From NCBI GenBank assembly GCA_976226885.1, contig OZ320317.1, positions 79,794,001 to 79,858,000 on the forward strand: a stretch of DNA of 64,000 bases, in the 5' to 3' direction. Position 1 is the first letter of the stretch, and every line of letters begins with the position of its first letter. This stretch comes from Iphione sp. A-MEVVRFRX5 (taxonomy: Eukaryota). The notes under the pieces were generated by a model. That model made no database searches. It saw nothing but the letters and a program-made list of their open reading frames with translations, and was not told the DNA's origin. Positions 1 through 62,000 of the stretch are shown piece by piece. The position numbers and the translations under genes are program-made.

Positions 1-289
1 CTCTACCACCTGGCGTCTAGATAGTTGGCTGTATATATTTTTACAAGACACAAATATGTGAAAGGTTGCTCTTTTGCGGCTATGGTTGTACAACGTTTGA
101 GAGGAATCAATGTTGGGACAGGGGTTTAGACACAGTGCTTGCGACACACTTTGTCTTCAAAATGTGCACTCTTCAAACTAACGTTCTATACATTGTAACG
201 TGTCAATCGTCGTCAGGCCGGATGGCCACCGCGAAATAAAGAACTTCCACACAGAATATGCGTTGTTGCTCTCACTTCCAAGTCCGGAT

Positions 290-540
290 GAGAACTGTCT
301 TTATTCAGGAAATCAGTGCCCTTATATACAGAGTCTGGCTCTAAAATTAGCCATGGTACATCCTTAAAAATAGTAACACCCTCCCCCAGAGATCTTTCTG
401 GAGGGGTGCTTCTGGAAACTTCTATAGCACATACTACCTTTCTCTACAGGATTCTTCTGGAGAGATCCTTTCTAGAACCTTCCGAGCTATGCTCGGTACA
501 CACGTACTCCCTCCTAGGGGAGTTTCTAGAATGTTCTTCC
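290..540 (-). promoter_or_regulatory. Heat-shock (HSF) promoter directed leftwards out of the window
   Basis: Three perfect 3-unit HSEs (TTCnnGAAnnTTC) at 410-422, 470-482 and 524-536, plus imperfect ones at 391-403 and 455-467. Minus-strand TATATAAG at 328-321 and an Inr-like ACAGTT with its A at 296, 32 nt downstream of the TATA start. Confidence 0.8.
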
Positions 541-1519
541 CACCCCACGCCACCGGTGGCTATGTCGGAGGATTATCCTCCGAGAACCCTTTCGGAGGAA
601 ACACTCTCAATGCGCATTTTATCTATACCAAATGCCGAAACGCTACAACATATATCACGATGCCACAGTCCTTTGTTTTACAAATCCTTTCTCTCTATCC
701 TGCCTATAATTTTTGTGTCCGGATCCAGTATCCCATTGGATCCATTAGAGGTACGTAATGTTTGAGTCAATATGAAAAAAGCACTATCTATTTTTCATTA
801 TTCTGTGATGCTATTCACGATACTACGCACATTCAAAGCGAACACTAATTAATTAATAGTAATTAATCCATAATTCTGATCCAGGAATCGACCCTGGAGG
901 GACTAAGTAGTTTGGTCTGCCTGCCAGATAGAAATATGAATCTATATAGAGCTATCTATATAGTGCTCACAGCTTCCAAATTATCTACGGCAGTCAGGTG
1001 TAGTCCAACTCTCTGAATAGTAATACGTCTTTATAATTGTCATCAGATAACTCAGTGTTCCTTCATTTGTCTCATTCCAGTATTAGGATGTAATTACGGA
1101 TAGTTTTTTAAAGATGGCTGGATCACATTTGTAGCAAAACATGACAAAGTATCAGATCAGCTTAAAATATTATAGTATACAAATATGTTGAAGGCACATA
1201 AAGCATTGTCTGGTATATGAAAGCCTGTTACGAACGGTTTATATCGTCAAGGATATCCATGAGCATGCAATATCAACTTATTTACAACTACCTAAATAGA
1301 TGTAGGCAAAAGCATATGTGGACGTATAAACATACGACAAGCTTAACAAATACTATACAATGTCACGATGCGGGCAGTTTGTTATTCTGGGATAAACTAC
1401 CCTCACTTTTAATCTGCCCTCTTTCTGGCCCTTTTGTGAAGGAGATAATAGATTTTTTTATTTTAGATTTTTTTATTTTCCTATTTCTAAATTGTTTTCC
1501 ATCGTGGTGTGTCAATAAA

Positions 1520-1560
1520 TTGGATGTGTTCCACTAGCATTTGGATGTGTTCCAATAGCA
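1520..1560. repeat. 21-bp tandem duplication
   Basis: TTGGATGTGTTCCA(C/A)TAGCA occurs at 1520 and again at 1541. Confidence 0.9.
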
Positions 1561-3383
1561 ATAAAAAGGCACGCATAAAAAAAAGCGCGCAAGATCCCTT
1601 GTAAGGTAAATGTTCAGAAATCACATAAAGTAATTATATCCGATATCATTGAATACATTCCCTGAAGAAATGAAGGGTGTCCTCGATTGTTTGCCCTCAA
1701 GTTGAAGCAGAGCCAGGGAGGCACATCTGAGGAAATCTCTGAGATGACAGATGAGCAAATGATATGGCTGAGGTACTTTTATTTGTATATACTCTCAGCT
1801 AATTGATGCAATCAGAACAAGTGACAGAAAAAAGTTTAAGCTGATTCCCAGAAGGCATCTAATCCTCGAGAGATGAAATTGTAGCCTGAAGAGTGGAAAA
1901 TTAAATTTCTAAGAAGCGCGGACTGCCCTGGGCTGACATTCTATGAGAACAGGAAACTGCACATAGTGCATATACTGGTGGGTGTGTACTGCTGACAAAT
2001 TACATATTCCCCAACGAAGATTGTAGATAATCCAGTCAACTTTTTAATCTGAGGATCAAGAGGTTGCCATCTCGAACTCTCTCAATTCTATGACGTTGCT
2101 TCCCCCCAGAAAGGCCGGACTCTTATCATAATGAGATTTGCTTGGATTATTCTTTTTTTTTCTCTCTCTCTGTTTTTTTGTCACCGCTGGTGTTCCATAT
2201 TTGCAGCTGCGCGGATAACAGACACAGTGTGCGGGAGGCATCTGTGCTGCCCCCTACGGCCTCCCTCACTCCCTCTGGTGATGGCCGCTTTCCTTTGACG
2301 TCTGATCGCCAACTGACGCGAAAAACAAGTCGCTCGATCTTGCCGCCTTGCTCTCCGCGTATGGACTGCGCATCTGCCTCACGCTGAGGAGGGTCTGCCA
2401 GACGGCGTCCGTCCAGCTTCCCTTGCCACCCCGCCTCGCCCTACATATTACCCCCCCCCACACACACACACACACACTCCCTCCTTCCACCTCTACCACA
2501 ACCAGCGGACCAGCTGTCCGACCTTATTGAAGTGACAGCCGAGATATTACCCCCGAGATGGTAACGCCAGCGAACGGTGCACTTTTTTTTGGTTGACAGA
2601 TCTGATTGGACTGTGGGCTTGGATACACCGCCGAAGTGTCGAGCTCGTCTAAGGCCTGATGGACGAATCCAGTTTGCTTCCAGGAGCATTAATTTGTAAG
2701 AAAGTAGCCAGGAAAGTGGCAGGTCCTCATTGCTTGGGGAGCAGAGGGGCGAAAGAGAAAGTAGGGGTAGAAATTGCAGTATCCATATATGCTAGTGAAT
2801 ACAACCTCTTGTCGTGTTCTATTTCAGAGCTGAAAGACCGGACCAGATCTATCCTTATACTAAGATGTGCTTTTTGACTTATCCGAAATTACGGTCATCG
2901 TGTACTTCTGGAAGGGAACTTGCAAGTAAAGAGTGGCCTATGTACTTATGTTCATTTATAAAGACAGCGATGACAATAATGCATTTTAATATTCCGGGAA
3001 GAAAGAGGAGTGGTAATCGGTATCCGAAAATGACAAGAGAACAGGAAGGAAAGACCAGTCTGAGCGTTAACCAAAACACGCTTCCGTCGGAAAATTAAAA
3101 GAAATTGTGCACTGATATGGCCGCAGATACCTATCTCTTCCAATACATTCATTTCCATGACAACATCTTTCTGATAGACAATCAGATACCTGCAAGTTCA
3201 AGGGCACGTTTACGTTAAGAAGGACAGCGCCGGGCTGAGGCGAAGGCCGATGCAGGTGACCCAGGAATGGGAGAGGGAGGCGCGGGGGAAGGTTCTACAA
3301 AAAATGGAAATCAGACCGAGATCAACCGGCAGACGACGAAGAATTGCACTAATTTGGTCCCTATCCAATCTTTATTCCCGGAC

Positions 3384-42222: not shown

Positions 42223-44070
42223 TCAATCAATCAATCAAGGAGAGTATTCTTATTTCCTCAGAGATGGCGATGATCTCAGTCTTCTACGTGCCGCCATTCT
42301 AATTTTCCAAAGCACCACCAAGTCCCAATCCTCAAGAAACTCTGAGAATCAGGACCTTCTTGCTGGGTATAACAATTTCCTTATTCTTCAAATTGTCAGC
42401 AGTGCATAGTGCCGTGCTTTAACACAGATTGCAAACGTAGAGTAGAGTCGATTGACTGAATTGCCTAGAACCGGGTATTTAATATCAATCTCGGTGAATA
42501 AAGTAAAAACCACTACCATGGTGAGCTCATTAGATGTGAATACAAATTAGTTGTTTTTTAAAAGTTTATGAGCTTATTGACACCACTCAATTTTACACTG
42601 AGATATTGCGGTGTGAAAGTTGCATATTAGAAAGTTGTTCGCAATATTTTGGAAGTACTGATCTTGTTCGTCTTCTTGAGCACATCTGGCAAGTCTTTCC
42701 ATCCTTGAATGCCTCTAACTAGGAAACCTCCTCGCATCAGAGATGACTTGGCCCTTATTTGTTGTATCTAGAGACGTCTCCCTCTTCTTGTTCTGCCCTT
42801 ACGCTCTGCTCTCAGGATACCACGCAGCTGCAACCTGTGGACTAAAGAGACACATCTAGCCATTGCTATATGATCAATTGATGATAGATCAAACCTCTCG
42901 CTCAGTCTGGTAGCTGGGATTTCTCTCTTCGAGTCTCTGGTTAATAAAACACGTTCTAGGGCCTTATTGTATTCAATTTCCAGACTCTGCAGGCCTTTTC
43001 TAGAAGCACCCGCTTTGAATGCAAGCCCATCTATAAAAAAACCGTTCAATACACCCCCTATATACCGCCAAACGTGCACAAAATGGCAAGTGAGTACTTA
43101 ATTGTCCCATCATCATACTCCTAGAGCGCACAACTGATCTTATATTTCAAAAAATGAAAGGCAACCAGGTCAGCTTAGGATCGCGCTTAAACCCCAGCAA
43201 TTTGGGATCACCTTCCATCTTAAAACTGACCCCTTTTAAGGTCAAGTCAAGATTTTAAAATCCTTGGCCTTACCAAACCCAGTAAACACAGTTTTTGATT
43301 CATTTATTTTCAGACCATTCATATCCGACCAGGCCGAAATATCTGTCAGCCCCCTCTGTAAACGCAATGTCATCAGGTTGCTGGCCGTTGCATATAGGGT
43401 TGAGTCGTCAGCATATATCACACACTGTACCAAATCTAAGCAGTCGGGGAAATCGTTAATCATCAACACAAACAATAGGGGGCCTAGGATGCTCCCTTGG
43501 GGAACACCTCTAATCACGACCTTCTCCTTCGACCTAACCAAATTACATGATGCAAATTGGTATCTATAGCTCAAATAGGACTGAATCAACTTGATGTGCC
43601 CCTTCCCCAGAAATTAAGACCTTTTTTCCAAGTGCTGTCATTTGGGAATAAATGTAGAATTATATCATCCATAATCTGACGTTGAGACTCAGTGTAATCC
43701 TATTAATTTGAGGTCTAATTCGTGTATGTCAGTTAGCTTGAGCGGATCAACAGTCAAATATACTTAACACTAAGGTCAGGCTTCCCAGCTGACTCAAGGA
43801 GCTCCTGAGTAATTGCCTGATTAATTGCTGCCAACCTGCCCGCATTGTAATCAGTTGGTCTGGCATAATCAAGTGAAAGGGGATGGTGGAGAGAATCAAA
43901 ACAGACGTGAGTTTGGGACACATCTAAAAGGCATTTTTACCTTTACAATGAAAACTTCATATTCAACGATGGTCGAATTAATTGATTCCATTCCATTTTT
44001 CAACCAAGTGGTCACTAGGGAACAAGGACAGTTGGTCAAATGAGTACTTTTGACTGTCAATCATCAAGCA
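42223..44070 (-). mobile_element. 5'-truncated CR1/L2-group LINE, RT pseudogene with (TTGA)4 tail
   Basis: LVTTWLKN..VF...PFRCVPNSRL, IQSYLSYRYQ, GVPQGSILGPLLF, YADD (ORF 43242-43589) and FLVRGIQGWKDLP. 3' hairpin GAGAT-CATCGCC-ATCTC. (TCAA)4 at 42223-42238. Confidence 0.85.
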
Positions 44071-45929: not shown

Positions 45930-48156
45930 CAGTGGGACGTCCCAAATACGGATACCCTTGCTTCTGCCTCAAACTGTCCACATTTCAGATGCATCCATAT
46001 TGTAAATTGGTTAAAAGTAAATGAGATGTGTATATCGGGTAAATGGAGAACTGACAACTGTCATCATTTATCCATATTGAATAAATAGATAAATAATGCA
46101 TAATAATAACAACAAACAGTAATAGATACATACAAATGGAAATAATTGAAGGCAATTTAAACTCTATCTTTAAAAAACTGTCTACAGTTGACTGGACAAC
46201 CTTCCTTGAGAGAGTCCTGGAGGAATGGTACTGTTGGTATGGTGTTAGGAGATCAAGGCACTCCAAGTCTCCTTTAAGGAAAATATGTTTCCTCATCTTC
46301 ATGAGCATGTCCTGAATGTCAGTGGTCTCACACTTCTCCTTGATCTGTGCCTTATCCGTGCCTTGTCCTCATCCTCTAGCTCATCAGCATTCCATTCCTC
46401 CTCACTGGTACTGTCAGCTGCCAGTTCATCATCCAGGCTCTTATATTCCTCAGGTGACATCCCGATTTCCTCTGGAAGACCCTCCTGAACCTTGGAGCGG
46501 AGAGTGAGGAGTGACACATCATCGATTTCAGGAGGAATTGCCACACTCTCAGCATCATCAGGTACTGACCTAATGAAGCATGCCTCAACTGTGGACAGGT
46601 TCAAAGCCTTGACTGCAGCATGTAGCCAAGTCACTGCACACTTCATGTCCACAGTGCCAATGACTGCCCTAGGTTTCTGCTCATCCAGCTGGGACAAAAT
46701 GTACTGCAGCAGTGATTTCTTATAATGAAATTTCACTGCTTAGATTGTGCCTAAATCCAATGGCTGGAGCACAGAGGTTGCATTTGATGGGAGGAAGACC
46801 ACCTAGGCATTTAATAGCTGCAGTCCTCCTGGATGTGATGGGGCATTGTCCATCAGCAGATAGGCTTTTCTTCCTTGGGCTTTAATCTTCCTGTTGAAGT
46901 TGTGCAGCTATTCTTCAAAAATGACTGTAGTCATCCATGGATGTCTGTTACTTTTGCAGACAACTGGTGGTAATGACAGGTCCTTGACATTCCTCAAACA
47001 CCTAGAGTTTGCTGCCTTCCCAATAATGAATGTATTCTGGAATTCTCTAAGAGCATTCAAGCAAAACATACCTATGATATGATCTGTGGACTTCTTACTT
47101 GAGAAAACATCCAATCCTCTGACACTTAGTGTGTGGTCTGGTAGGGCCCTGTAAAATAAGCCAGCCTCATCGACATTAAAGATGTCTCTCAGTACATACC
47201 CCTCGAGGATGGTTGTGAGATGCTCCAGCCAAGTTTCCACTGCTGATTTGTTGACTGTGGCTCATTCCCCAACAACCTTGAAACGATCAATGCAATGTCA
47301 TTTTTTAAATTTGTGGAGCCAGCCTCTTGATCCCTTGAAGTCATCCATTCCCGGTTGCTTTGCTACTAATGGGACAAAGTATAGGTGCAGAGATGGGCAT
47401 ATCCAGCAGTCATATCCTCGAAAACCAGAAAAAGACCCTCTGATCCAGTGTGGACATGGTGGTTGACAGACAGCAATGTTTGGCATTAGGATCAGCACAG
47501 TGCTTGTAGTCATTCATAATCTCTGCTTTTCTTCTAAGAATATAGCCAGCCTGAGTTTTCCCCACTCCAAACTGCTCAGCAAGTTGACACAGACTACAAC
47601 TGGGACTACCCTTGATGATTTGCACTTTCTCACATAGGGTGAGATCCCTCCTCTTGGGGGTTGTCTAGGAGTTTACAGGCATGTTGATTGTTCAGCAGAC
47701 ATCTGGTGAATGAATTTCTCCTTGAAAACCCCCCTTATGTATGGACCAGGTTCCCCTCAAACCCTGCAGGCGTCAATTGGAATTAGCTAAGTGTCAGGAT
47801 ATCACATGGGGTGAGACCCTCTGTGCTCATTTGAGGGGCCAAGGTGACAATTTTGACCATTGTTTTTTGCAATATCAAAGTGAATAGTATCCCTTTGATT
47901 TGCCCAGGGTGTCAGGGAGGTGACAAATTTGTGCTGACTTTTGAAAAAATGTTTTTCGTAAGCCCCACCCCCCAGGACATCTTCCATTCACATGACAACA
48001 TGTTTTCCACAGGGGATGCTTCCCTAAAATGGGTGTCATGATCAGAGTGTCTTTATACATTGGTTATGTATGGGAACAGAGTCAGTTCTTTGCTGAATTG
48101 TCTGCATTTGGGATGCATCCACATTTTAGATGTGTCCACGAGGGGACATTGAACTG
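45930..48156 (-). mobile_element. Full-length decayed Tigger/pogo DNA transposon (~2.2 kb)
   Basis: TA|CAGTGGGACGTCCC... and ...GAGGGGACATTGAACTG|TA are degenerate TIRs. Subterminal GATGCATCCA repeats occur at both ends. Encloses a transposase pseudogene. Confidence 0.7.
46160..47682 (-). pseudogene. Tigger/pogo (CENP-B-like HTH + DDE_1) transposase pseudogene
   Basis: KRRDLTLCEKVQII..QLAEQFGVGKT (HTH), FKGSRGWL, IFNVDEAGLFYRALP, WMTTVIFEE, LLMDNAPSH, VLQPLDLG and C-terminal VQSTVDSFLK. Multiple stops and frameshifts. Confidence 0.92.
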
Positions 48157-55092: not shown

Positions 55093-55252
55093 NNNNNNNN
55101 NNNNNNNNNNNNNNNNNNNNNNNNNNNNNNNNNNNNNNNNNNNNNNNNNNNNNNNNNNNNNNNNNNNNNNNNNNNNNNNNNNNNNNNNNNNNNNNNNNNN
55201 NNNNNNNNNNNNNNNNNNNNNNNNNNNNNNNNNNNNNNNNNNNNNNNNNNNN
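55093..55252. other. Assembly gap (160 N)
   Basis: Run of N. Confidence 1.
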
Positions 55253-55416: not shown

Positions 55417-56676
55417 GGTAGAAGGGAGATATTGTTGAGTGTGTATGTGTGCATGTATGTGCATTGTCAGACCTAGGAAACCCTAAACCAGGTATGTATG
55501 TTTGTAGGTGTGTTAGCAAAAGAGTAAAATTTACATAATTTCACTTTTAAAATACTTGAATTATGACCAAAATTATACAGTGCCATGGGGCATTGTACAC
55601 AAATATCATATCTTAAAATCAGGTCTTTTGAGTCTTATAAGACCCACAAGAGTGTGACGGATGGTCGGGACAACAGCTGGTAGCATTCCTAATGTCCCTC
55701 CCTCTATGAGGCGGGGGACAAAAATAAATAACACATAAAGTAGTTTGTGAGAATTCTAAATGCTGTATGGCTTCAACTTAGAAACCTTCAATTTTTTCAC
55801 ACTACTGCTGTACAAACTACGTTTAAAGTTTCATTTCTAATATCGATCTTGTATAAAGGTAGGCTGCATTGACATGTAATTGGGTTAACAGCACCCTGAA
55901 GACGATCATCCCGTTGGTGTCGGATTACACTGTTTATAGGCTAGTTGGAGCGAACAGGCCTATTACAGCGACTCCCGTTCATTAGTGACAGAATCTCAGA
56001 AGGTATATTTCTACTAATCAGTTGGGTGAGTTGTCCTTTCGTACGTGCATTCTAACAGTGGCATCCTCGCTAAAAACAAGGCAGAAACAAAGCCACCCCT
56101 GGTACCATACGCAATGCCAGTCGCGGAGATATGCAGGGTGCACGTGACCAGTGGAGCCGCAGACACTCCGGGTCTGCTTCTAGAGCCCGAGGACGCGGGC
56201 AAGGACGCGGAGCCGAGCCCGGAAGGTCAGCAGTCGGCAAGCCATCCTCTACGACCACAATGAGCAACTATTACTTTTGTTTACGGCGACCTACAACAAC
56301 GGGGGGTGGGGGGTGCAGCGTGGTCGATAAGACGAGGGGGAAGGCGGCGGGGGTGGTCGGGGGAGGGGGGGGGATTGGTGAGGGCGAACCGGGCTAATGA
56401 AGCCACTTGTCGGGCTTGATAACACACCTGGCCGCTACCAAGGAGGAGGAAGGGGGCTTGAGCTGGCGTGACCCAAGCTATAGCACATCCCTGTGGTCCT
56501 GTGGCACAGAAGAGCCGGGAAGAGGAAGGGGTCATCCTCGCACTAAATACAACGGGAAGACAGGACCCCAAGACGAATATGTCAACGCACGAATACATGT
56601 ACAAAATGAACAGCTGTAATATTAGTCCATGGGGAGAGATCAGAACCAGGCATATCCACAGGCAGGCAGACAGACC

Positions 56677-56712
<36 letters not shown>
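56677..56712. repeat. (GACA)9 microsatellite
   Basis: Perfect tetranucleotide run. Confidence 0.95.
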
Positions 56713-56829
56713 GTCAAATAGACAAGCAGATAAAGGGTCGGGCAGAAAAACAAGACAGTGGGACACAGTTAACGAACGAAAAGCCAACACTATCTTTGGT
56801 GAAACACCGCAGAGATCCCGCTAATGAGC

Positions 56830-57480
56830 CTCATCTAGTATCGGTGGTGGTTACATAGGGCCCGAGGAGACGTGACCCTGCTATCCGACCATCGCCGCCG
56901 CCGCGGGCGCCGACGTCGGGCGGCCGGGACCCCGTCGACACAGGGCGCGGCAGTAGCGAGCGGCATGTGGGACTCGCATGTCTGCGCCACCAAACGGCTT
57001 CCTGCATCAATACAATTAGGACGTAGAGACATCCATCATGTTGTTGCCGGAGCCTGCCTTGTCCGATCACTTCCCCCCGCCCCCCCCTCCTCCCTCCCCC
57101 AGGCGTCCCCAATCAAACTCATCCACCCACCCGCCCCCCAGGCCCACCACGACAGCTCGTTGTGGACTCACGCCGGGCGTTGTTTCGAAGGTGCTCCACT
57201 CTTCTCTCCGTTCACATCCACCACCCCTCCCCCTCTACAAAACCAACCAACCCCGTCCTGCTGGAGAGCCGTTTAATGTACGCCGCCGAACACACACAGC
57301 TGGCGGTCGCCGGCGTCGCAGCCGGCGCGCTCAGCCGCCCGCAAATGGCGGCAACATGGCCGCTTGCCGACGTAAACACAAGGACCACAAAGACGGCCGT
57401 GGCCTGCCGCTCCTAGCGCGCGGTCCGCCGCCGCCGCCGTCGACCGCTACCGTCTCATTCATACCCCATATCCGACAAAT
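56830..57480. promoter_or_regulatory. CpG island, candidate promoter
   Basis: Very high GC and CpG content. Tandem YY1-like CAAATGGCGGCAACATGGCCGC at 57342-57363. Strong minus-strand donors nearby: GTGAGT at 57171-57166 and GTAAGT at 58030-58025. Confidence 0.45.
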
Positions 57481-58849
57481 CGATACGAAACTTGAAAGTA
57501 TTTCGCTTGTTTCCAGCATGGGGTATTGGTTCTTGCGGGGAGGCTGCCGGCTCCCTTCAATAAGATTACAGACGTCGTTCGGTGCATTGCAACAAGATTC
57601 CAAGGGCGTTTTTGATCAATCTCCCCCACCCACCGCCTCTCCACCATCATCCACATTAAACAAAGTCTCGGTCCCTGGGTACTTAATCAGCATTTCAAGA
57701 TTTCGCCTACCAAGCCAGTCTTCACTTGTCTGTTGCTGCCAACCTTTCCCGTATACCCCTTGGATCACCTTCACTCAGTATGTGTCTGTATCGTCTTTGT
57801 CTGTCTCTCTGTCTGTCTGTGGAGACAGACAAACAGACAGACAACATGTCTCTCTCTGTCTCTCTGTCTCTGTCTCTGTCTCTCTCTCGTTTCTTATCTT
57901 TTCCTGTCCCCTCCCCCTCCCTCCTCTACCTCCCACCCTCTCATCCTCCATCCATCCCCGAGCACCATCGCCAACTGTCTATGGCGCGCGTCCCAACACG
58001 ACAGCCGACTGCCCGTCAGCGAGAACTTACGGCCGGGGTGAACTCTCAAGACGCTGCATCGAGAACCTTTGGTCACAGGCAAATTGACCATCACCGAGAC
58101 GTGGCCCCGAACGGCCGGACCTTCCCGCCTGAGCGTGAGAACAGATCGATAACATCCACGGGTGAGAGCGAGGAGGGGGGGGGGGAAGAGAGACGGCGGT
58201 TTAGGTGGCGCTTGAGGAGTCCAGTACCTCTTGTTTTGGGTTTTTTTTGTTTTTGATTTTAAACTACCGTCTACCTCAAGGCCATAACTTCAGCCCCCAC
58301 TCCTCCCTCGCATCCTTTCGAGCAGCTCCCATCTGCTCACTGGAGAAGGTTGAGCAATCGATGGGCTGACCGACCCGCTTCCTCGTCCCCTTTGCACGGA
58401 ACACCGGTGTTGGGTAAGCAGGAGAACAACACGGCGGGCCGATTAACCCATCCCACACGGGGCACCAACACGGGCTCCACCGTAAACAATGCTTCACAAC
58501 CAACAGGTTGGTTGTAAGGACAGGCTGTCAAGCCATGTAGGACCCCCCCCCCCCCCCTGTTGACAGGCTAACCATACATAGAGGCCCTCCTCTGGGTGCG
58601 GGGCGTTGACAGCCCGATAAAATATACAGACATGGTCTGGGGGAGCCTAAGAATATATGATGTGAGGGAAACCCCTAGCATGCACTGGCGATGACCTCCG
58701 GGATGATATTTCCCAAGAGGGAGTAGTGGTGGGGCTCGCCTAAGTAACCCTCGCCATTCATGCGCCCATCACACGGGCACGGCTGCGTGAATTTGCATTG
58801 AATGGCATAAAAAAAAAACAACAACCTATGTGTATGGTAACTCGGGCTT

Positions 58850-59004
58850 NNNNNNNNNNNNNNNNNNNNNNNNNNNNNNNNNNNNNNNNNNNNNNNNNNN
58901 NNNNNNNNNNNNNNNNNNNNNNNNNNNNNNNNNNNNNNNNNNNNNNNNNNNNNNNNNNNNNNNNNNNNNNNNNNNNNNNNNNNNNNNNNNNNNNNNNNNN
59001 NNNN
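58850..59004. other. Assembly gap (155 N)
   Basis: Run of N. Confidence 1.
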
Positions 59005-62000
59005 TGTCGGTGTCGGTGTGGCTGACAGCAGCGAGTCCCGGGTGTCACAGGCCCTGGAGGAGCCCGGAGGCTGGCTGTATGGGCTGCCTGGTGGAGATAA
59101 GACGGTACAGGACCCAACACTGGGTACCGATAGGGGTAGCACACCACCCAATCCCCGGAGCCAATCTCCTGACTTGCCGCACGCGCCGCCCCAAGGAGCC
59201 CGAGGTGCTACCCGTGAAAGACAAGAAAGTCGAGGGAATTCTCAATGCATCAACTTCAAGTGACGCCTGTAATGTATACCTAAACACTAACAAGCCCTCG
59301 AAGTTTGCGACATAACCGGTGCTTTGAGAAGATTTAATTGCTTTTAAGGACACAACACCTTGTCAAATTAACTCACATAGGACATGTACATGTGGGCGAA
59401 ATCACAGTACTGTGTAAGTTTTCTTCCACGTTAAGCTTGTGGTTACCTTTCAACAATGATGTGACAGATGATATTTATGCTACACGTATACAAACTACTT
59501 AATTTGGCGGGTCTTATTTGACATCAGACCATATGTCATTCCGGTCTTCAGAAAGTTCACTATTCAGTTTCTTAAAGCAAAGCACAATATGCCGCTGAGT
59601 AATGGGTAGGAATAGAGTAGGGTAGCATTTCCATCGTAAGCAGTATGTGGAAAAAGTAGTTTGCTTCAGGTGCAGTCATAACTGCAGTAGGCGACAAGAA
59701 CCCTTCTCCATCTTTCTTCCCTTCCCCTCGTGCTTCGTCACGGCCTTCTCCTGCTCCTCCTGCTCTAAACTGCACATACATCAATATCCTATTCCTACAC
59801 AAATACACTGTACCAGACCAGTGCTCATTTCCACAGTGGTTTTATTATATTCTCATATGAATGAGAACAGCTTCTTCGTCTGCCTAGTATTGCACTCAAG
59901 GCCCCTTCTTTTGACGAAGTTCTGGAGTGGCTCCAGCCACCTAAACACCCATTCAATCCTTACAGTTAAAAAAAATACGTCTCAATCCGGGTATTTAGGC
60001 AATCCCACTCCATTCGATTTTATGTATATTATACCGACCATATACCTGCACTAAATCAACCTTATTCTTGCTGTTTCATCAATCTGACCGCACCAGTAAG
60101 CGGCCCTGTATAAGCACCGGTGTCACGGTTTCGTATAAAACTGCTCTAGTAGTCGCTGAATCGGGCCATTAAAAATTCAAATTGGAGGCCAGGACATCTC
60201 CAGTACCACAACCCCAAATTGGCCGCTGCCCTAACCTCCTCTACCGAGGATCGATAAGGGGAGATGGATGCACGCAGGCCGTCGTGGGGCCGGTCAGATA
60301 TGGCGGTCAAATAGGACGCACTGCTGGTGGCGCCTCTGGTGGCAGCCAGGGATCGCCACTGGGGGATCGGAGGGCGGACGAACGGCCGTGTAAAGATCCA
60401 CTTGATAAAGCCTTACAGGGTCGCCACGGTGAGAGGAAGAGGGACAGCGGGAGGGGAGGGGAGGGGAAGGGGGAGAGGAGGCAGAGAGTGAGGATGAAAG
60501 AAAGAGAGGGGATGGGCACAAGTGTGGACGGCAGACGGAGAAACACGGAAAAGAAACAGAGAAAGAAAAGGTCAGCCAAAGAGGTATACGGCCAGACTGG
60601 CAGACAGACTTACGGACAGACAGGCACACAACCTGACAAGGAAACAGACTGGCACAGACAGGAGAGGAGGGGGAGGGACGAACTAGACGTGTGGATCATA
60701 ACTAGTACGAAACAAAAACAAGAGAAGGCGGCGGCAAACGCTGAGACCGAAGATAGAAAGTCAGTGGCACACCGACTGCAGAGTTATGGCAATGCAAATA
60801 CACCCGGTGCAGAGAAATGAAGAAGAGTACAAGGTCACAAAGGCTTGCTCTAAAATAAAATACAGACTCGGTGACCTCTGCAGAAACCTGATTCTTATAG
60901 CCCGTAACGGTACTTCGGGTCTGACTCGGTGACCTCAACGCTGAAGTGATTCTATTGGCCCCAACGGTAATGCGGTTTCGCTCAGACCAACGTATTATGC
61001 ACGCCTTTGGCACCCCTTGTATATTCCGATCTCGCCAAAGCAGCACGCCAAGAAAGTATCATGAGGTTGTGTTCCCTCTCTCGTCTATTTTTAGCTTTCA
61101 AATCACTGACCGTTCGTACTGCACTACGTACAAAGGCTTCGAACGGAAACAGCGGGCAGGGGGGAAGGGGGAGGGGGGGCTGAGTTTGAATATGAGTTGT
61201 AATAACGAGAGCATAAAACGCCTGGACGAGGAAAGTAGAGCTACATGTACTGCTTTTGCCCAGAGTGGGCTGGAACTCTGCCTGGTATGGGCTCCTGGCA
61301 GCAACTTCAGCCAAGCAGCCTGGTGCAGGAAGGGCTAATTGGGACTGCGTGTACGTCTGGGTGCGGCTCGAATATGACGACCGAGCCAGGTGTGTATCAC
61401 AAAGTCTTTGACTGATTGAGACTGCTCATAATCATCTGATTCAAACCAGTTAGGACTGGTCCAAGCCAACAAGCTTAATTAAGAGCCGCTAAGAGGCAAT
61501 GGGGTTGAATACAGGTCCTTTAAAGTTTAGTCAAGGTCGGGCAGGTCATTGCTAACTAAAACCTGTTTGTCCAAGGGGGACGACATTAACACTGAGTTGC
61601 ATCTGGTTAGGTCTCAGCAGGCCCAGTCATTTAAAGTTTGGGGCCAGTCATTTCAAGTTGGTGGGGGGGGGGGGGGAGGTGGTGCCGAACACGACCACAA
61701 GACACTAGGTTCAGTGAAAGCCGCACAAATGAGGACTCTGAGGCTACCAGCCGGGAGGACCTCGAATGGCAGTCATTATGTGGATTACAAGCTTGGCCTT
61801 TGGGCTCTGGGAGTTATCCTCTGAGCGATGTGCTATCTGCCGGCCGGCACGTGTGGTCTGTGTTTCTGAATGTTGCCACCGAGGGCGGGGGAAGTGGGGG
61901 TTCACCGAATCACAGCCGGGCCTGCTGCACACGCTCGTGTGGACGCCGCTCTTAGCTGCTGGGGTGGGTGGTCTGGCGGAATCACACCAATTGAGAATGA

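What the first reader, a model, noticed from the sequence alone, without database searches (positions are those of the whole stretch)
290..540. Textbook heat-shock promoter at the left edge: three perfect HSEs, TATA and initiator, with its gene outside the window
Seen: TTCnnGAAnnTTC occurs three times within 127 bp (410-422, 470-482, 524-536), with two imperfect HSEs between them. A minus-strand TATATAAG sits 32 nt upstream of an Inr-like ACAGTT. I noticed no comparable cluster elsewhere in the 64 kb. Established: clustered trimeric HSEs upstream of a TATA box are the architecture of HSF1-inducible genes (hsp70, small HSPs, hsp90). Inference: an inducible transcript starts near 296 and runs left. 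The 296 nt in view encode no chaperone; they hold only a tiny uORF (MYRTLV*) and a possible early donor (GAA|GTGAGA). The target is either an HSP just beyond the edge or, more interestingly, a heat-inducible non-coding or unknown gene. The 149-aa ORF at 316-765 is just this promoter read as protein.
Basis: partly seen in the sequence, partly recalled or inferred. Interest (0 to 1): 0.7.

Follow-up and report, generated by a model that had tools for sequence, protein, structure and literature searches.

The report
Heat-shock promoter inside a probable solo LTR
The textbook heat-shock promoter at the left edge is real. It most likely belongs to a 454-base leftover end (solo LTR) of a retrotransposon, not to a heat-shock protein gene beyond the edge, and heat-responsive LTRs of this kind are already known.

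Summary
The only three perfect TTCnnGAAnnTTC sites in 64 kb lie at 410-422, 470-482 and 524-536. On the minus strand they are followed by TATATAAG (329-322) and an Inr-like ACAGTT (298-293).

The "gene just off the edge" reading is probably wrong. The promoter sits inside a 454-bp unit, 194-647. This unit has TG...CA ends, 9/11 terminal inverted repeats and a perfect 4-bp target-site duplication (ACAT). That combination arose at 2.5% of control positions in this window.

AATAAA lies between the TATA box and the start site, with a GU-rich tract downstream. This promoter-plus-terminator layout is typical of an LTR. There is no primer-binding site, no polypurine tract and no gag/pol nearby, which fits a solo LTR.

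Earlier notes of this scan report abundant LTRs carrying heat-shock elements (HSEs) on other DNA of this genome. A public-contig scan for the same triple-HSE geometry mostly returned transposon-borne arrays.

I could not retrieve other copies, the left flank or any reads. Repetitiveness and heat induction are therefore untested.

Verdict: a probable solo LTR with a heat-shock-type promoter (confidence about 0.65), a new member of a known kind, of modest interest.

The parts
190..193 (.). Left copy of the 4-bp target-site duplication, ACAT
   Evidence: identical to 648-651, directly abutting the TG...CA unit.
194..647 (-). Candidate solo LTR of 454 bp, read on the minus strand as U3 (647-297), then R/U5 (296-194)
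   Evidence: TG..CA ends, TIR 9/11 and TSD ACAT; an equal or better candidate arose at 10 of 404 control anchors (2.5%). GC is 0.47 against 0.41 and 0.36 in the flanks.
637..647 (-). 5' terminal inverted repeat of the LTR (minus strand TGTAGCGTTTC)
194..204 (-). 3' terminal inverted repeat of the LTR (plus strand TGTAACGTGTC; the minus strand ends ...ACGTTACA)
648..651 (.). Right copy of the target-site duplication, ACAT
565..598 (.). Three TCGGAGG motifs in alternating orientation (565-571, 577-583, 592-598) in distal U3, forming a palindrome
   Evidence: 3 of the window's 7 matches lie within 34 bp; a hairpin-capable palindrome with weak significance (z = -1.8).
519..536 (.). Distal HSE: perfect trimer at 524-536 plus a fourth, degenerate unit
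445..482 (.). Middle HSE block: degenerate units at 445-467 next to the perfect trimer at 470-482
391..427 (.). Proximal HSE block: imperfect site at 391-403 and perfect trimer at 410-422 with degenerate outer units
322..329 (-). TATA box, TATATAAG
   Evidence: one of 4 TATATAAG in the window.
301..306 (-). AATAAA poly(A) signal between the TATA box and the start site, so it would be read only by transcripts arriving from upstream
   Evidence: the composite TATA..AATAAA..GU-rich occurs once in 128 kb of both strands, here.
293..298 (-). Inr-like ACAGTT; predicted start near 296
   Evidence: sequence only, no read support.
246..256 (-). GU-rich tract (TTCTGTGTGG), a candidate downstream poly(A) element after several CA dinucleotides at 268-257
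   Evidence: inference only.

Best explanation
Positions 194-647 are a solo LTR in minus orientation, left behind by an LTR retrotransposon. A Ty3/Gypsy-type element fits best, given the 4-bp target duplication and TGT...ACA ends. Its U3 region carries its own heat-shock enhancer: three perfect and two to three degenerate HSEs, built partly by 54-59-bp internal duplication. A TATA box and an initiator follow. By analogy with ONSEN and the Macrostomum LTR elements, trimerised HSF would bind the array under heat or proteotoxic stress and fire transcription at about 296 towards the left. The AATAAA sits just upstream of that start. Transcripts born here therefore lack it, while transcripts arriving from upstream would be polyadenylated about 35-45 nt later. 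This is the usual LTR arrangement for one sequence acting as both promoter and terminator. The internal part of the element is gone, so any transcript today is a read-through of the unrelated left flank. Shown here: the motifs, their statistics, the termini and duplication, and the absence of PBS, PPT and gag/pol. Inferred: LTR identity, HSF binding, heat induction, and the start and poly(A) sites.
For: The HSE cluster is real and non-random. For the 454-bp unit, the TG..CA ends, 9/11 terminal inverted repeats and perfect 4-bp duplication (ACAT) give an empirical chance of 2.5% in the same search space. The TATA-AATAAA-GU-rich composite occurs only once in 128 kb of both strands, directly downstream of the HSE array. 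After the inner end of the unit there is no TGG-type primer-binding site. Before its outer end there is no purine tract. No retroelement domain was found in ORFs up to 9 kb to the right. All of this fits a solo LTR. The 296 nt downstream of the start hold no chaperone ORF, and the uORF's ATG lies within the left target-duplication copy, in the flank. The window is transposon-rich, with a LINE reverse transcriptase fragment and pogo/Tigger remnants. Earlier notes of this scan report abundant Gypsy LTRs with 3-4 perfect HSEs upstream of a TATA box, and many solo LTRs with 4-bp duplications, elsewhere in this genome. These are leads, not tests. As a base rate, 77 of the 107 public contigs with the same triple-HSE geometry fall in multi-copy families. 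Those families sit next to Copia gag-int-RT, RVT_1, an integrase core, a gag aspartyl protease or a PIF1 helicase. One family is a sharply bounded repeat of about 285 bp. Published precedent exists: Ty3/Mdg4 LTR families of Macrostomum lignano with 1-4 canonical HSEs upstream of the start are induced more than 250-fold by heat, and the HSEs are required (PMC12801592).
Against: No second copy of the unit was found, so repetitiveness, the defining property of an LTR, is untested. Searches were blank in the window, among the metagenome loci, in prokaryote and viral collections and as a protein ORF. The termini-plus-duplication evidence is p about 0.025, and I noticed the AATAAA argument after the fact. 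The superfamily cannot be assigned without an internal region. No reads were available, so the start site, heat induction and polyadenylation are all unobserved.
Confidence: 0.65

Rival explanations
1. It is the resident promoter of a host heat-inducible gene (hsp70, a small HSP, hsp90 or an unknown gene) whose coding exons lie left of position 1. The gene would be reached through a long 5' UTR or a 5' UTR intron (donor near 272, acceptor near 31 or beyond).
For: The layout is textbook: an HSE array at about -95 to -240, a TATA box at -30 and an Inr. A plausible GT donor lies about 24 nt after the start. The sequence appears single-copy as far as I could search.
Against: The leader in view is 296 nt without a start codon and holds a uORF, which would be unusual for stress mRNAs. 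AATAAA lies immediately upstream of the start. The promoter is bracketed by TG..CA, terminal inverted repeats and a 4-bp duplication. The candidate acceptor near 31 lacks a pyrimidine tract. No HSP-type note exists for this genome in the scan's records, whereas several HSE-LTR notes do. The neighbourhood is transposon debris with no host gene recognised.
Confidence: 0.2
2. It is an LTR, but not a solo one. Either it is the 5' LTR of a full or truncated element whose body runs off the left edge, or it is another kind of HSE-carrying transposon, such as a Helitron-type or Ginger-type non-autonomous element. In either case the termini at 194 and 647 would be chance.
For: HSE arrays occur in Helitron-like contexts: a PIF1 helicase lies beside one array family, and Helitron1_CE is cited in PMC12801592. 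TG...CA ends with a 4-bp duplication are also made by other retroviral-type integrases (my own knowledge). A TGG lies at the very window edge (8-6, minus strand).
Against: The identical ACAT on both sides argues for a complete insertion unit of 454 bp. No primer-binding site follows the inner end at 193. The inverted repeats are only 11 bp long, which is short for a DNA transposon. The unit holds both promoter and poly(A) signals in one orientation.
Confidence: 0.1
3. It is a decayed or never-functional motif cluster, from internal duplication of a TTCTAGAA-containing word, with no promoter activity.
For: Part of the array arose by 54-59-bp duplication. That inflates the apparent improbability of three independent perfect sites. 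There is no expression evidence.
Against: The duplicated modules are only 76-86% identical, yet all three trimers remain perfect in their 9 specified bases. The array is correctly placed and oriented relative to an intact TATA box and Inr.
Confidence: 0.05

Closest known systems
HSE-containing Ty3/Mdg4 LTR retrotransposons of the flatworm Macrostomum lignano (Mlig-id115|Mag, Mlig-id36/55|CsRN1, Mlig-id38|Gmr1; PMC12801592)
   Same: An animal LTR with 1-4 canonical nTTCnnGAAnnTTCn sites in U3, upstream of a predicted TATA box and start site. That paper also reports solo-LTR insertions of the HSE-containing families.
   Different: There, heat induction (more than 250-fold) and the requirement for HSEs were shown by RNA-seq, qPCR and transgenes, and full elements with gag-pol define the families. 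Here there is one isolated 454-bp unit, no internal region, no other copy in hand and no expression data. No sequence similarity was tested.
ONSEN (ATCOPIA78) of Arabidopsis and other Brassicaceae
   Same: An LTR promoter that recruits the host heat-shock factor through HSEs. From my own knowledge, new insertions can make neighbouring genes heat-responsive.
   Different: ONSEN is a plant Ty1/Copia element with 5-bp target duplications and direct HSFA2 binding shown experimentally. The present unit is from an invertebrate, has a 4-bp duplication and is untested.
HSE-bearing Gypsy LTR family reported by this scan elsewhere in the same genome (s1-317811, s1-429454, s1-335015, s1-317938)
   Same: Same genome and same design as described: three to four perfect HSEs upstream of a TATA box in an LTR.
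   Different: I could not see those sequences. Whether this unit belongs to that family, to a sister family or to an unrelated one is unknown.
Canonical metazoan heat-shock gene promoters (e.g. Drosophila hsp70 or hsp83; my own knowledge)
   Same: Several trimeric HSEs within about 250 bp of a TATA box at -30 and an Inr-type start.
   Different: Those promoters are followed within about 100-250 nt by a chaperone ORF or a defined 5' UTR intron. They are not bracketed by TG..CA ends and a target duplication, and they do not carry AATAAA just upstream of the cap site.
Helitron1_CE of Caenorhabditis elegans (cited in PMC12801592)
   Same: A transposon that spreads HSEs and heat-inducible transcription around a genome.
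   Different: It is a rolling-circle DNA transposon without LTR-type termini or target duplications.

Membership tests
HSF-responsive heat-shock promoter | At least three contiguous inverted nGAAn units (a trimeric HSE), usually in several copies | tested here: met
   Three perfect trimers plus degenerate neighbours at 391-536.
HSF-responsive heat-shock promoter | Core promoter (TATA box at about -30, initiator) within a few hundred bp downstream of the HSEs on one strand | tested here: met
   TATATAAG at 329-322 and ACAGTT at 298-293 on the minus strand. The proximal perfect HSE lies about 81 bp upstream of the TATA box.
HSF-responsive heat-shock promoter | Heat-induced transcription and HSF occupancy | not testable with these tools
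   No sequencing run was listed for this stretch.
Promoter of an HSP gene | A chaperone ORF (Hsp70, Hsp20, Hsp90 or DnaJ) downstream of the start | tested here: inconclusive
   None in the 296 nt in view. The sequence left of position 1 could not be fetched.
LTR of an LTR retrotransposon (solo LTR) | 5'-TG...CA-3' ends with short terminal inverted repeats | tested here: met
   TGTAGCGTTTC ... (rc) TGTAACGTGTC, 9 of 11 matching, at 647 and 194.
LTR of an LTR retrotransposon (solo LTR) | A 4-6-bp target-site duplication directly flanking the unit | tested here: met
   ACAT at 190-193 and 648-651. The joint chance with the inverted repeats is 2.5%.
LTR of an LTR retrotransposon (solo LTR) | U3-R-U5 logic: promoter and poly(A) signal in the same orientation | tested here: met
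   The order TATA, AATAAA, Inr, CA dinucleotides, GU-rich tract; this composite is unique in the window. Motifs only.
LTR of an LTR retrotransposon (solo LTR) | Repeated in the genome, with some copies paired around gag-pol with a PBS and PPT | tested here: inconclusive
   No other copy in the window or in any reachable collection. The rest of this genome cannot be searched with these tools.
Ty3/Gypsy (Ty3/Mdg4) superfamily | RT-RNaseH-integrase domain order in the internal region | not testable with these tools
   No internal region is present. The 4-bp duplication and TGT..ACA ends are compatible but not diagnostic.

The most novel reading that the evidence does not exclude
The solo LTR has been co-opted. 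Its intact HSE, TATA and Inr module would now serve as the heat-inducible promoter or enhancer of a host transcript to the left, either a gene's alternative first exon or a stress lncRNA. In addition, its distal TCGGAGG palindrome array (565-598) would be a second input. That array is related to the GCGGAG arrays which this scan links to retrotransposon-encoded zinc fingers in the same genome. The promoter would then integrate HSF with an element-derived factor.
Probability: 0.1. Interest if true: 0.6.

Novelty: new member of a known kind. Interest (0 to 1): 0.3.

Why it matters
If this reading is right, the locus is one more copy of a transposon-borne heat switch in an invertebrate genome. 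Such LTRs can scatter HSF-dependent promoters next to host genes and can link transposition bursts to thermal stress. That has been shown experimentally in Arabidopsis (ONSEN) and in one flatworm. For annotation, the practical lesson is that a perfect HSE/TATA module does not imply a nearby chaperone gene. In my scan of public contigs, most arrays of this geometry sat in multi-copy families, several of them next to transposon genes. On its own, a single solo LTR without expression data is of modest interest.

Tried and rejected
- **Reads.** The look-up of sequencing runs listed no run.
- **Left flank.** An exact look-up of ten window ORFs in the protein collection found none. The look-up of encoding contigs therefore could not be anchored.
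- **Adjacent window notes.** The findings look-up refuses coordinates below 1.
- **Other copies of the unit.** All of these were blank: blastn and nhmmer within the window, the 107 metagenome loci, specific patterns in prokaryote genomes and viral contigs, and a protein search with the ORF read through the unit.
- **Empty-site test.** Joining the flanks in silico restores no ORF or known repeat, so it is uninformative.
- **Rfam and tandem repeats.** Rfam found nothing on the whole window. Tandem Repeats Finder found nothing across the promoter.
- **Alternative LTR boundaries.** Candidates with 5-6-bp duplications (59-769 and 59-1181) have poor inverted repeats and were rejected.
- **PBS reading.** I considered a primer-binding reading of TGGTAGAG at the window edge. 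It is too short, and it conflicts with the duplication at 190-193.
- **Self-priming.** A Tf1-type self-priming match has only a 5-nt overlap and was rejected.
- **DPE.** There is none at +28 to +33.
- **Plus-strand target gene.** No recognisable ORF or domain lies within 9 kb to the right.

Full report
**Observation.**
- The pattern TTCNNGAANNTTC occurs exactly three times in the 64-kb window, at 410-422, 470-482 and 524-536.
- Dinucleotide shuffles give 0.82 matches per window. A Poisson estimate for three sites within 127 bp is about 1e-6.
- Allowing two mismatches shows that the perfect trimers are extended or accompanied by degenerate units at 391-403, 405-427, 445-467 and 519-531.
- Part of the array was built by internal duplication: modules 391-411 and 450-470, and 469-482 and 523-536, are spaced 54-59 bp apart.
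- On the minus strand the array is followed by TATATAAG (329-322) and ACAGTT (298-293).
One small correction: one of the two imperfect sites lies on the TATA side of the first perfect site, not between perfect sites.

**What encloses the promoter.**
- I scanned for TG...CA pairs bracketing the promoter that are flanked by identical 4-6-bp words.
- The best candidate by a clear margin is 194-647 (454 bp). ACAT lies on both sides, at 190-193 and 648-651. The ends TGTAGCGTTTC and TGTAACGTGTC match at 9 of 11 positions.
- I repeated the same search around 404 other anchor positions in this window. An equal or better candidate arose at 10 of them, or 2.5%.
- Read on the minus strand, the unit has the order expected of an LTR:
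  - about 350 bp of U3 holding the HSE array and the TATA box;
  - AATAAA at 306-301, between the TATA box and the start site;
  - the Inr at about 296;
  - several CA dinucleotides at 268-257;
  - a GU-rich tract at 256-246;
  - the ...ACGTTACA end at 194.
- The composite TATA-AATAAA-GU-rich occurs once in both strands of the window, and it is here.
- A poly(A) signal just upstream of the cap site is the classic way for one repeat to act as promoter at the 5' end of an element and as terminator at its 3' end. That statement rests on my own knowledge of retroviral and retrotransposon LTRs.

**Solo or part of a full element.**
- Beyond the inner end of the unit (193 downwards, minus strand) there is no TGG-type primer-binding site.
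- Before the outer end (648 upwards) there is no purine tract.
- ORFs up to 9 kb to the right have no retroelement domain.
- With the same 4-bp word on both sides, the simplest reading is a solo LTR left by recombination between the two LTRs of one element.
- The restored target, ...TCTATACATATATCAC..., is an alternating pyrimidine-purine run. This recalls the target preference of some Gypsy-group elements (my own knowledge, not tested).
- GC content is 0.47 inside the unit, against 0.41 and 0.36 in the flanks.
It therefore lies in the flank and is not part of the promoter unit.

**Context.**
- I recognised no host gene in the window.
- It holds a LINE reverse-transcriptase fragment (43245-43613, RVT_1, E = 1.6e-16) and pogo/Tigger-like remnants (CENP-B_N and DDE_1, 46.9-47.7 kb).
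- The long ORFs in the GC-rich parts have no Pfam match.
- Earlier notes of this scan gave me the LTR lead. They are unchecked AI notes, which I treat as leads only.
  - On other DNA of the same genome they describe a young, abundant Gypsy-type LTR with three to four perfect HSEs upstream of a TATA box.
  - They also describe many solo LTRs, some with 4-bp duplications.
  - No note mentions an HSP gene.
- I could not compare sequences with those findings.

**Evidence from elsewhere.**
- One scan of public metagenome contigs for three TTCTRGAANNTTC sites at similar spacing returned 107 loci.
- None is related to this window beyond the HSE words.
- Seventy-seven of them fall in multi-copy families.
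- ORFs beside the arrays are a full Copia gag-integrase-RVT_2 polyprotein and Pol_BBD fragments, RVT_1, an integrase core, a gag aspartyl protease and a PIF1 helicase. Only one is a DnaJ.
- In the Copia-linked family the shared repeat is a sharply bounded unit of about 285 bp that contains the array.
- Arrays of this geometry in public contigs are therefore often transposon-borne.
- The published precedent in animals is Macrostomum lignano. There, Ty3/Mdg4 LTR families with 1-4 canonical HSEs upstream of the start site are induced more than 250-fold by heat, and mutating the HSEs abolishes induction. The same paper summarises ONSEN and Helitron1_CE (PMC12801592).

**Mechanism proposed.**
- Under heat or proteotoxic stress, HSF trimers would bind the three perfect sites and their degenerate neighbours.
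- They would then activate the TATA/Inr core about 80-240 bp downstream.
- Transcription would start near 296 and run left through about 100 nt of R/U5 into unrelated flank.
- In the parent element, the same sequence at the 3' end would have polyadenylated the genomic RNA some 35-45 nt after AATAAA.
- All of this is inference from motifs. No reads were available.

**What remains open.**
- The defining property of an LTR, repetition in the genome, could not be tested. No tool reaches the rest of this genome, and every reachable collection was blank.
- The left flank could not be fetched.
- I therefore hold the following odds:
  - solo LTR: about 0.65;
  - host heat-inducible gene beyond the edge: about 0.2;
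  - LTR or other transposon with different boundaries: about 0.1;
  - non-functional cluster: about 0.05.

**Verdict.**
It is a heat-shock-type promoter, but probably a transposon's own, now orphaned, and not that of an HSP gene.
- In kind it is a new member of a known class, and the scan has already met that class elsewhere in this genome.
- Interest is 0.3.

Noticed in passing
window 565-598: Three TCGGAGG motifs in alternating orientation within 34 bp (3 of the window's 7), forming a palindrome in the distal U3 of the candidate LTR. The motif is one base away from the GCGGAG arrays that earlier notes of this scan link to zinc-finger-encoding Gypsy elements of the same genome.
   Followed up: partly
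window 43245-43613 (-): Fragment of a non-LTR (LINE-type) reverse transcriptase: RVT_1, E = 1.6e-16.
   Followed up: partly
window 45988-47664 (-): Broken pogo/Tigger-like transposase split over several frames (CENP-B_N and a weak DDE_1 match, below Pfam's cut-off).
   Followed up: partly
L033:12105-12402, L022, L026, L038, L056, L058, L060, L067, L085, L036, L096: A dispersed repeat of about 285 bp, carrying a triple HSE array, is shared at 82-92% identity by 11 metagenome contigs. It sits 130-240 bp upstream of Copia-type ORFs (Pol_BBD), and a full Copia polyprotein lies at L033:3371-7921. This looks like an HSE-bearing Copia LTR in an unidentified eukaryote.
   Followed up: partly
L044:323-465 with ORF 636-1820 (-), family of 5 loci: A triple HSE array next to a PIF1-like helicase ORF. 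It is possibly a Helitron-type element carrying HSEs, as described for C. elegans Helitron1_CE.
   Followed up: no
L069:1362-1518, L007:2911-3098, L071:2776-2923: Further multi-copy HSE-array families lie beside an integrase core, a gag aspartyl protease and RVT_1 ORFs.
   Followed up: no
window 56000-62000: A GC-rich block (GC 0.47-0.57) with long proline- and serine-rich ORFs on both strands, for example a 349-aa ORF at 57038-58087. None of the three ORFs tested has a Pfam match. The block holds a masked N run at 58850-59004; another lies just upstream at 55093-55252. It looks like low-complexity sequence and not like genes.
   Followed up: partly
window 1449-1479, 1520-1560, 2459-2477: Small tandem repeats (15-bp x2, 21-bp x2) and a (CA)9 microsatellite lie to the right of the candidate LTR.
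   Followed up: no
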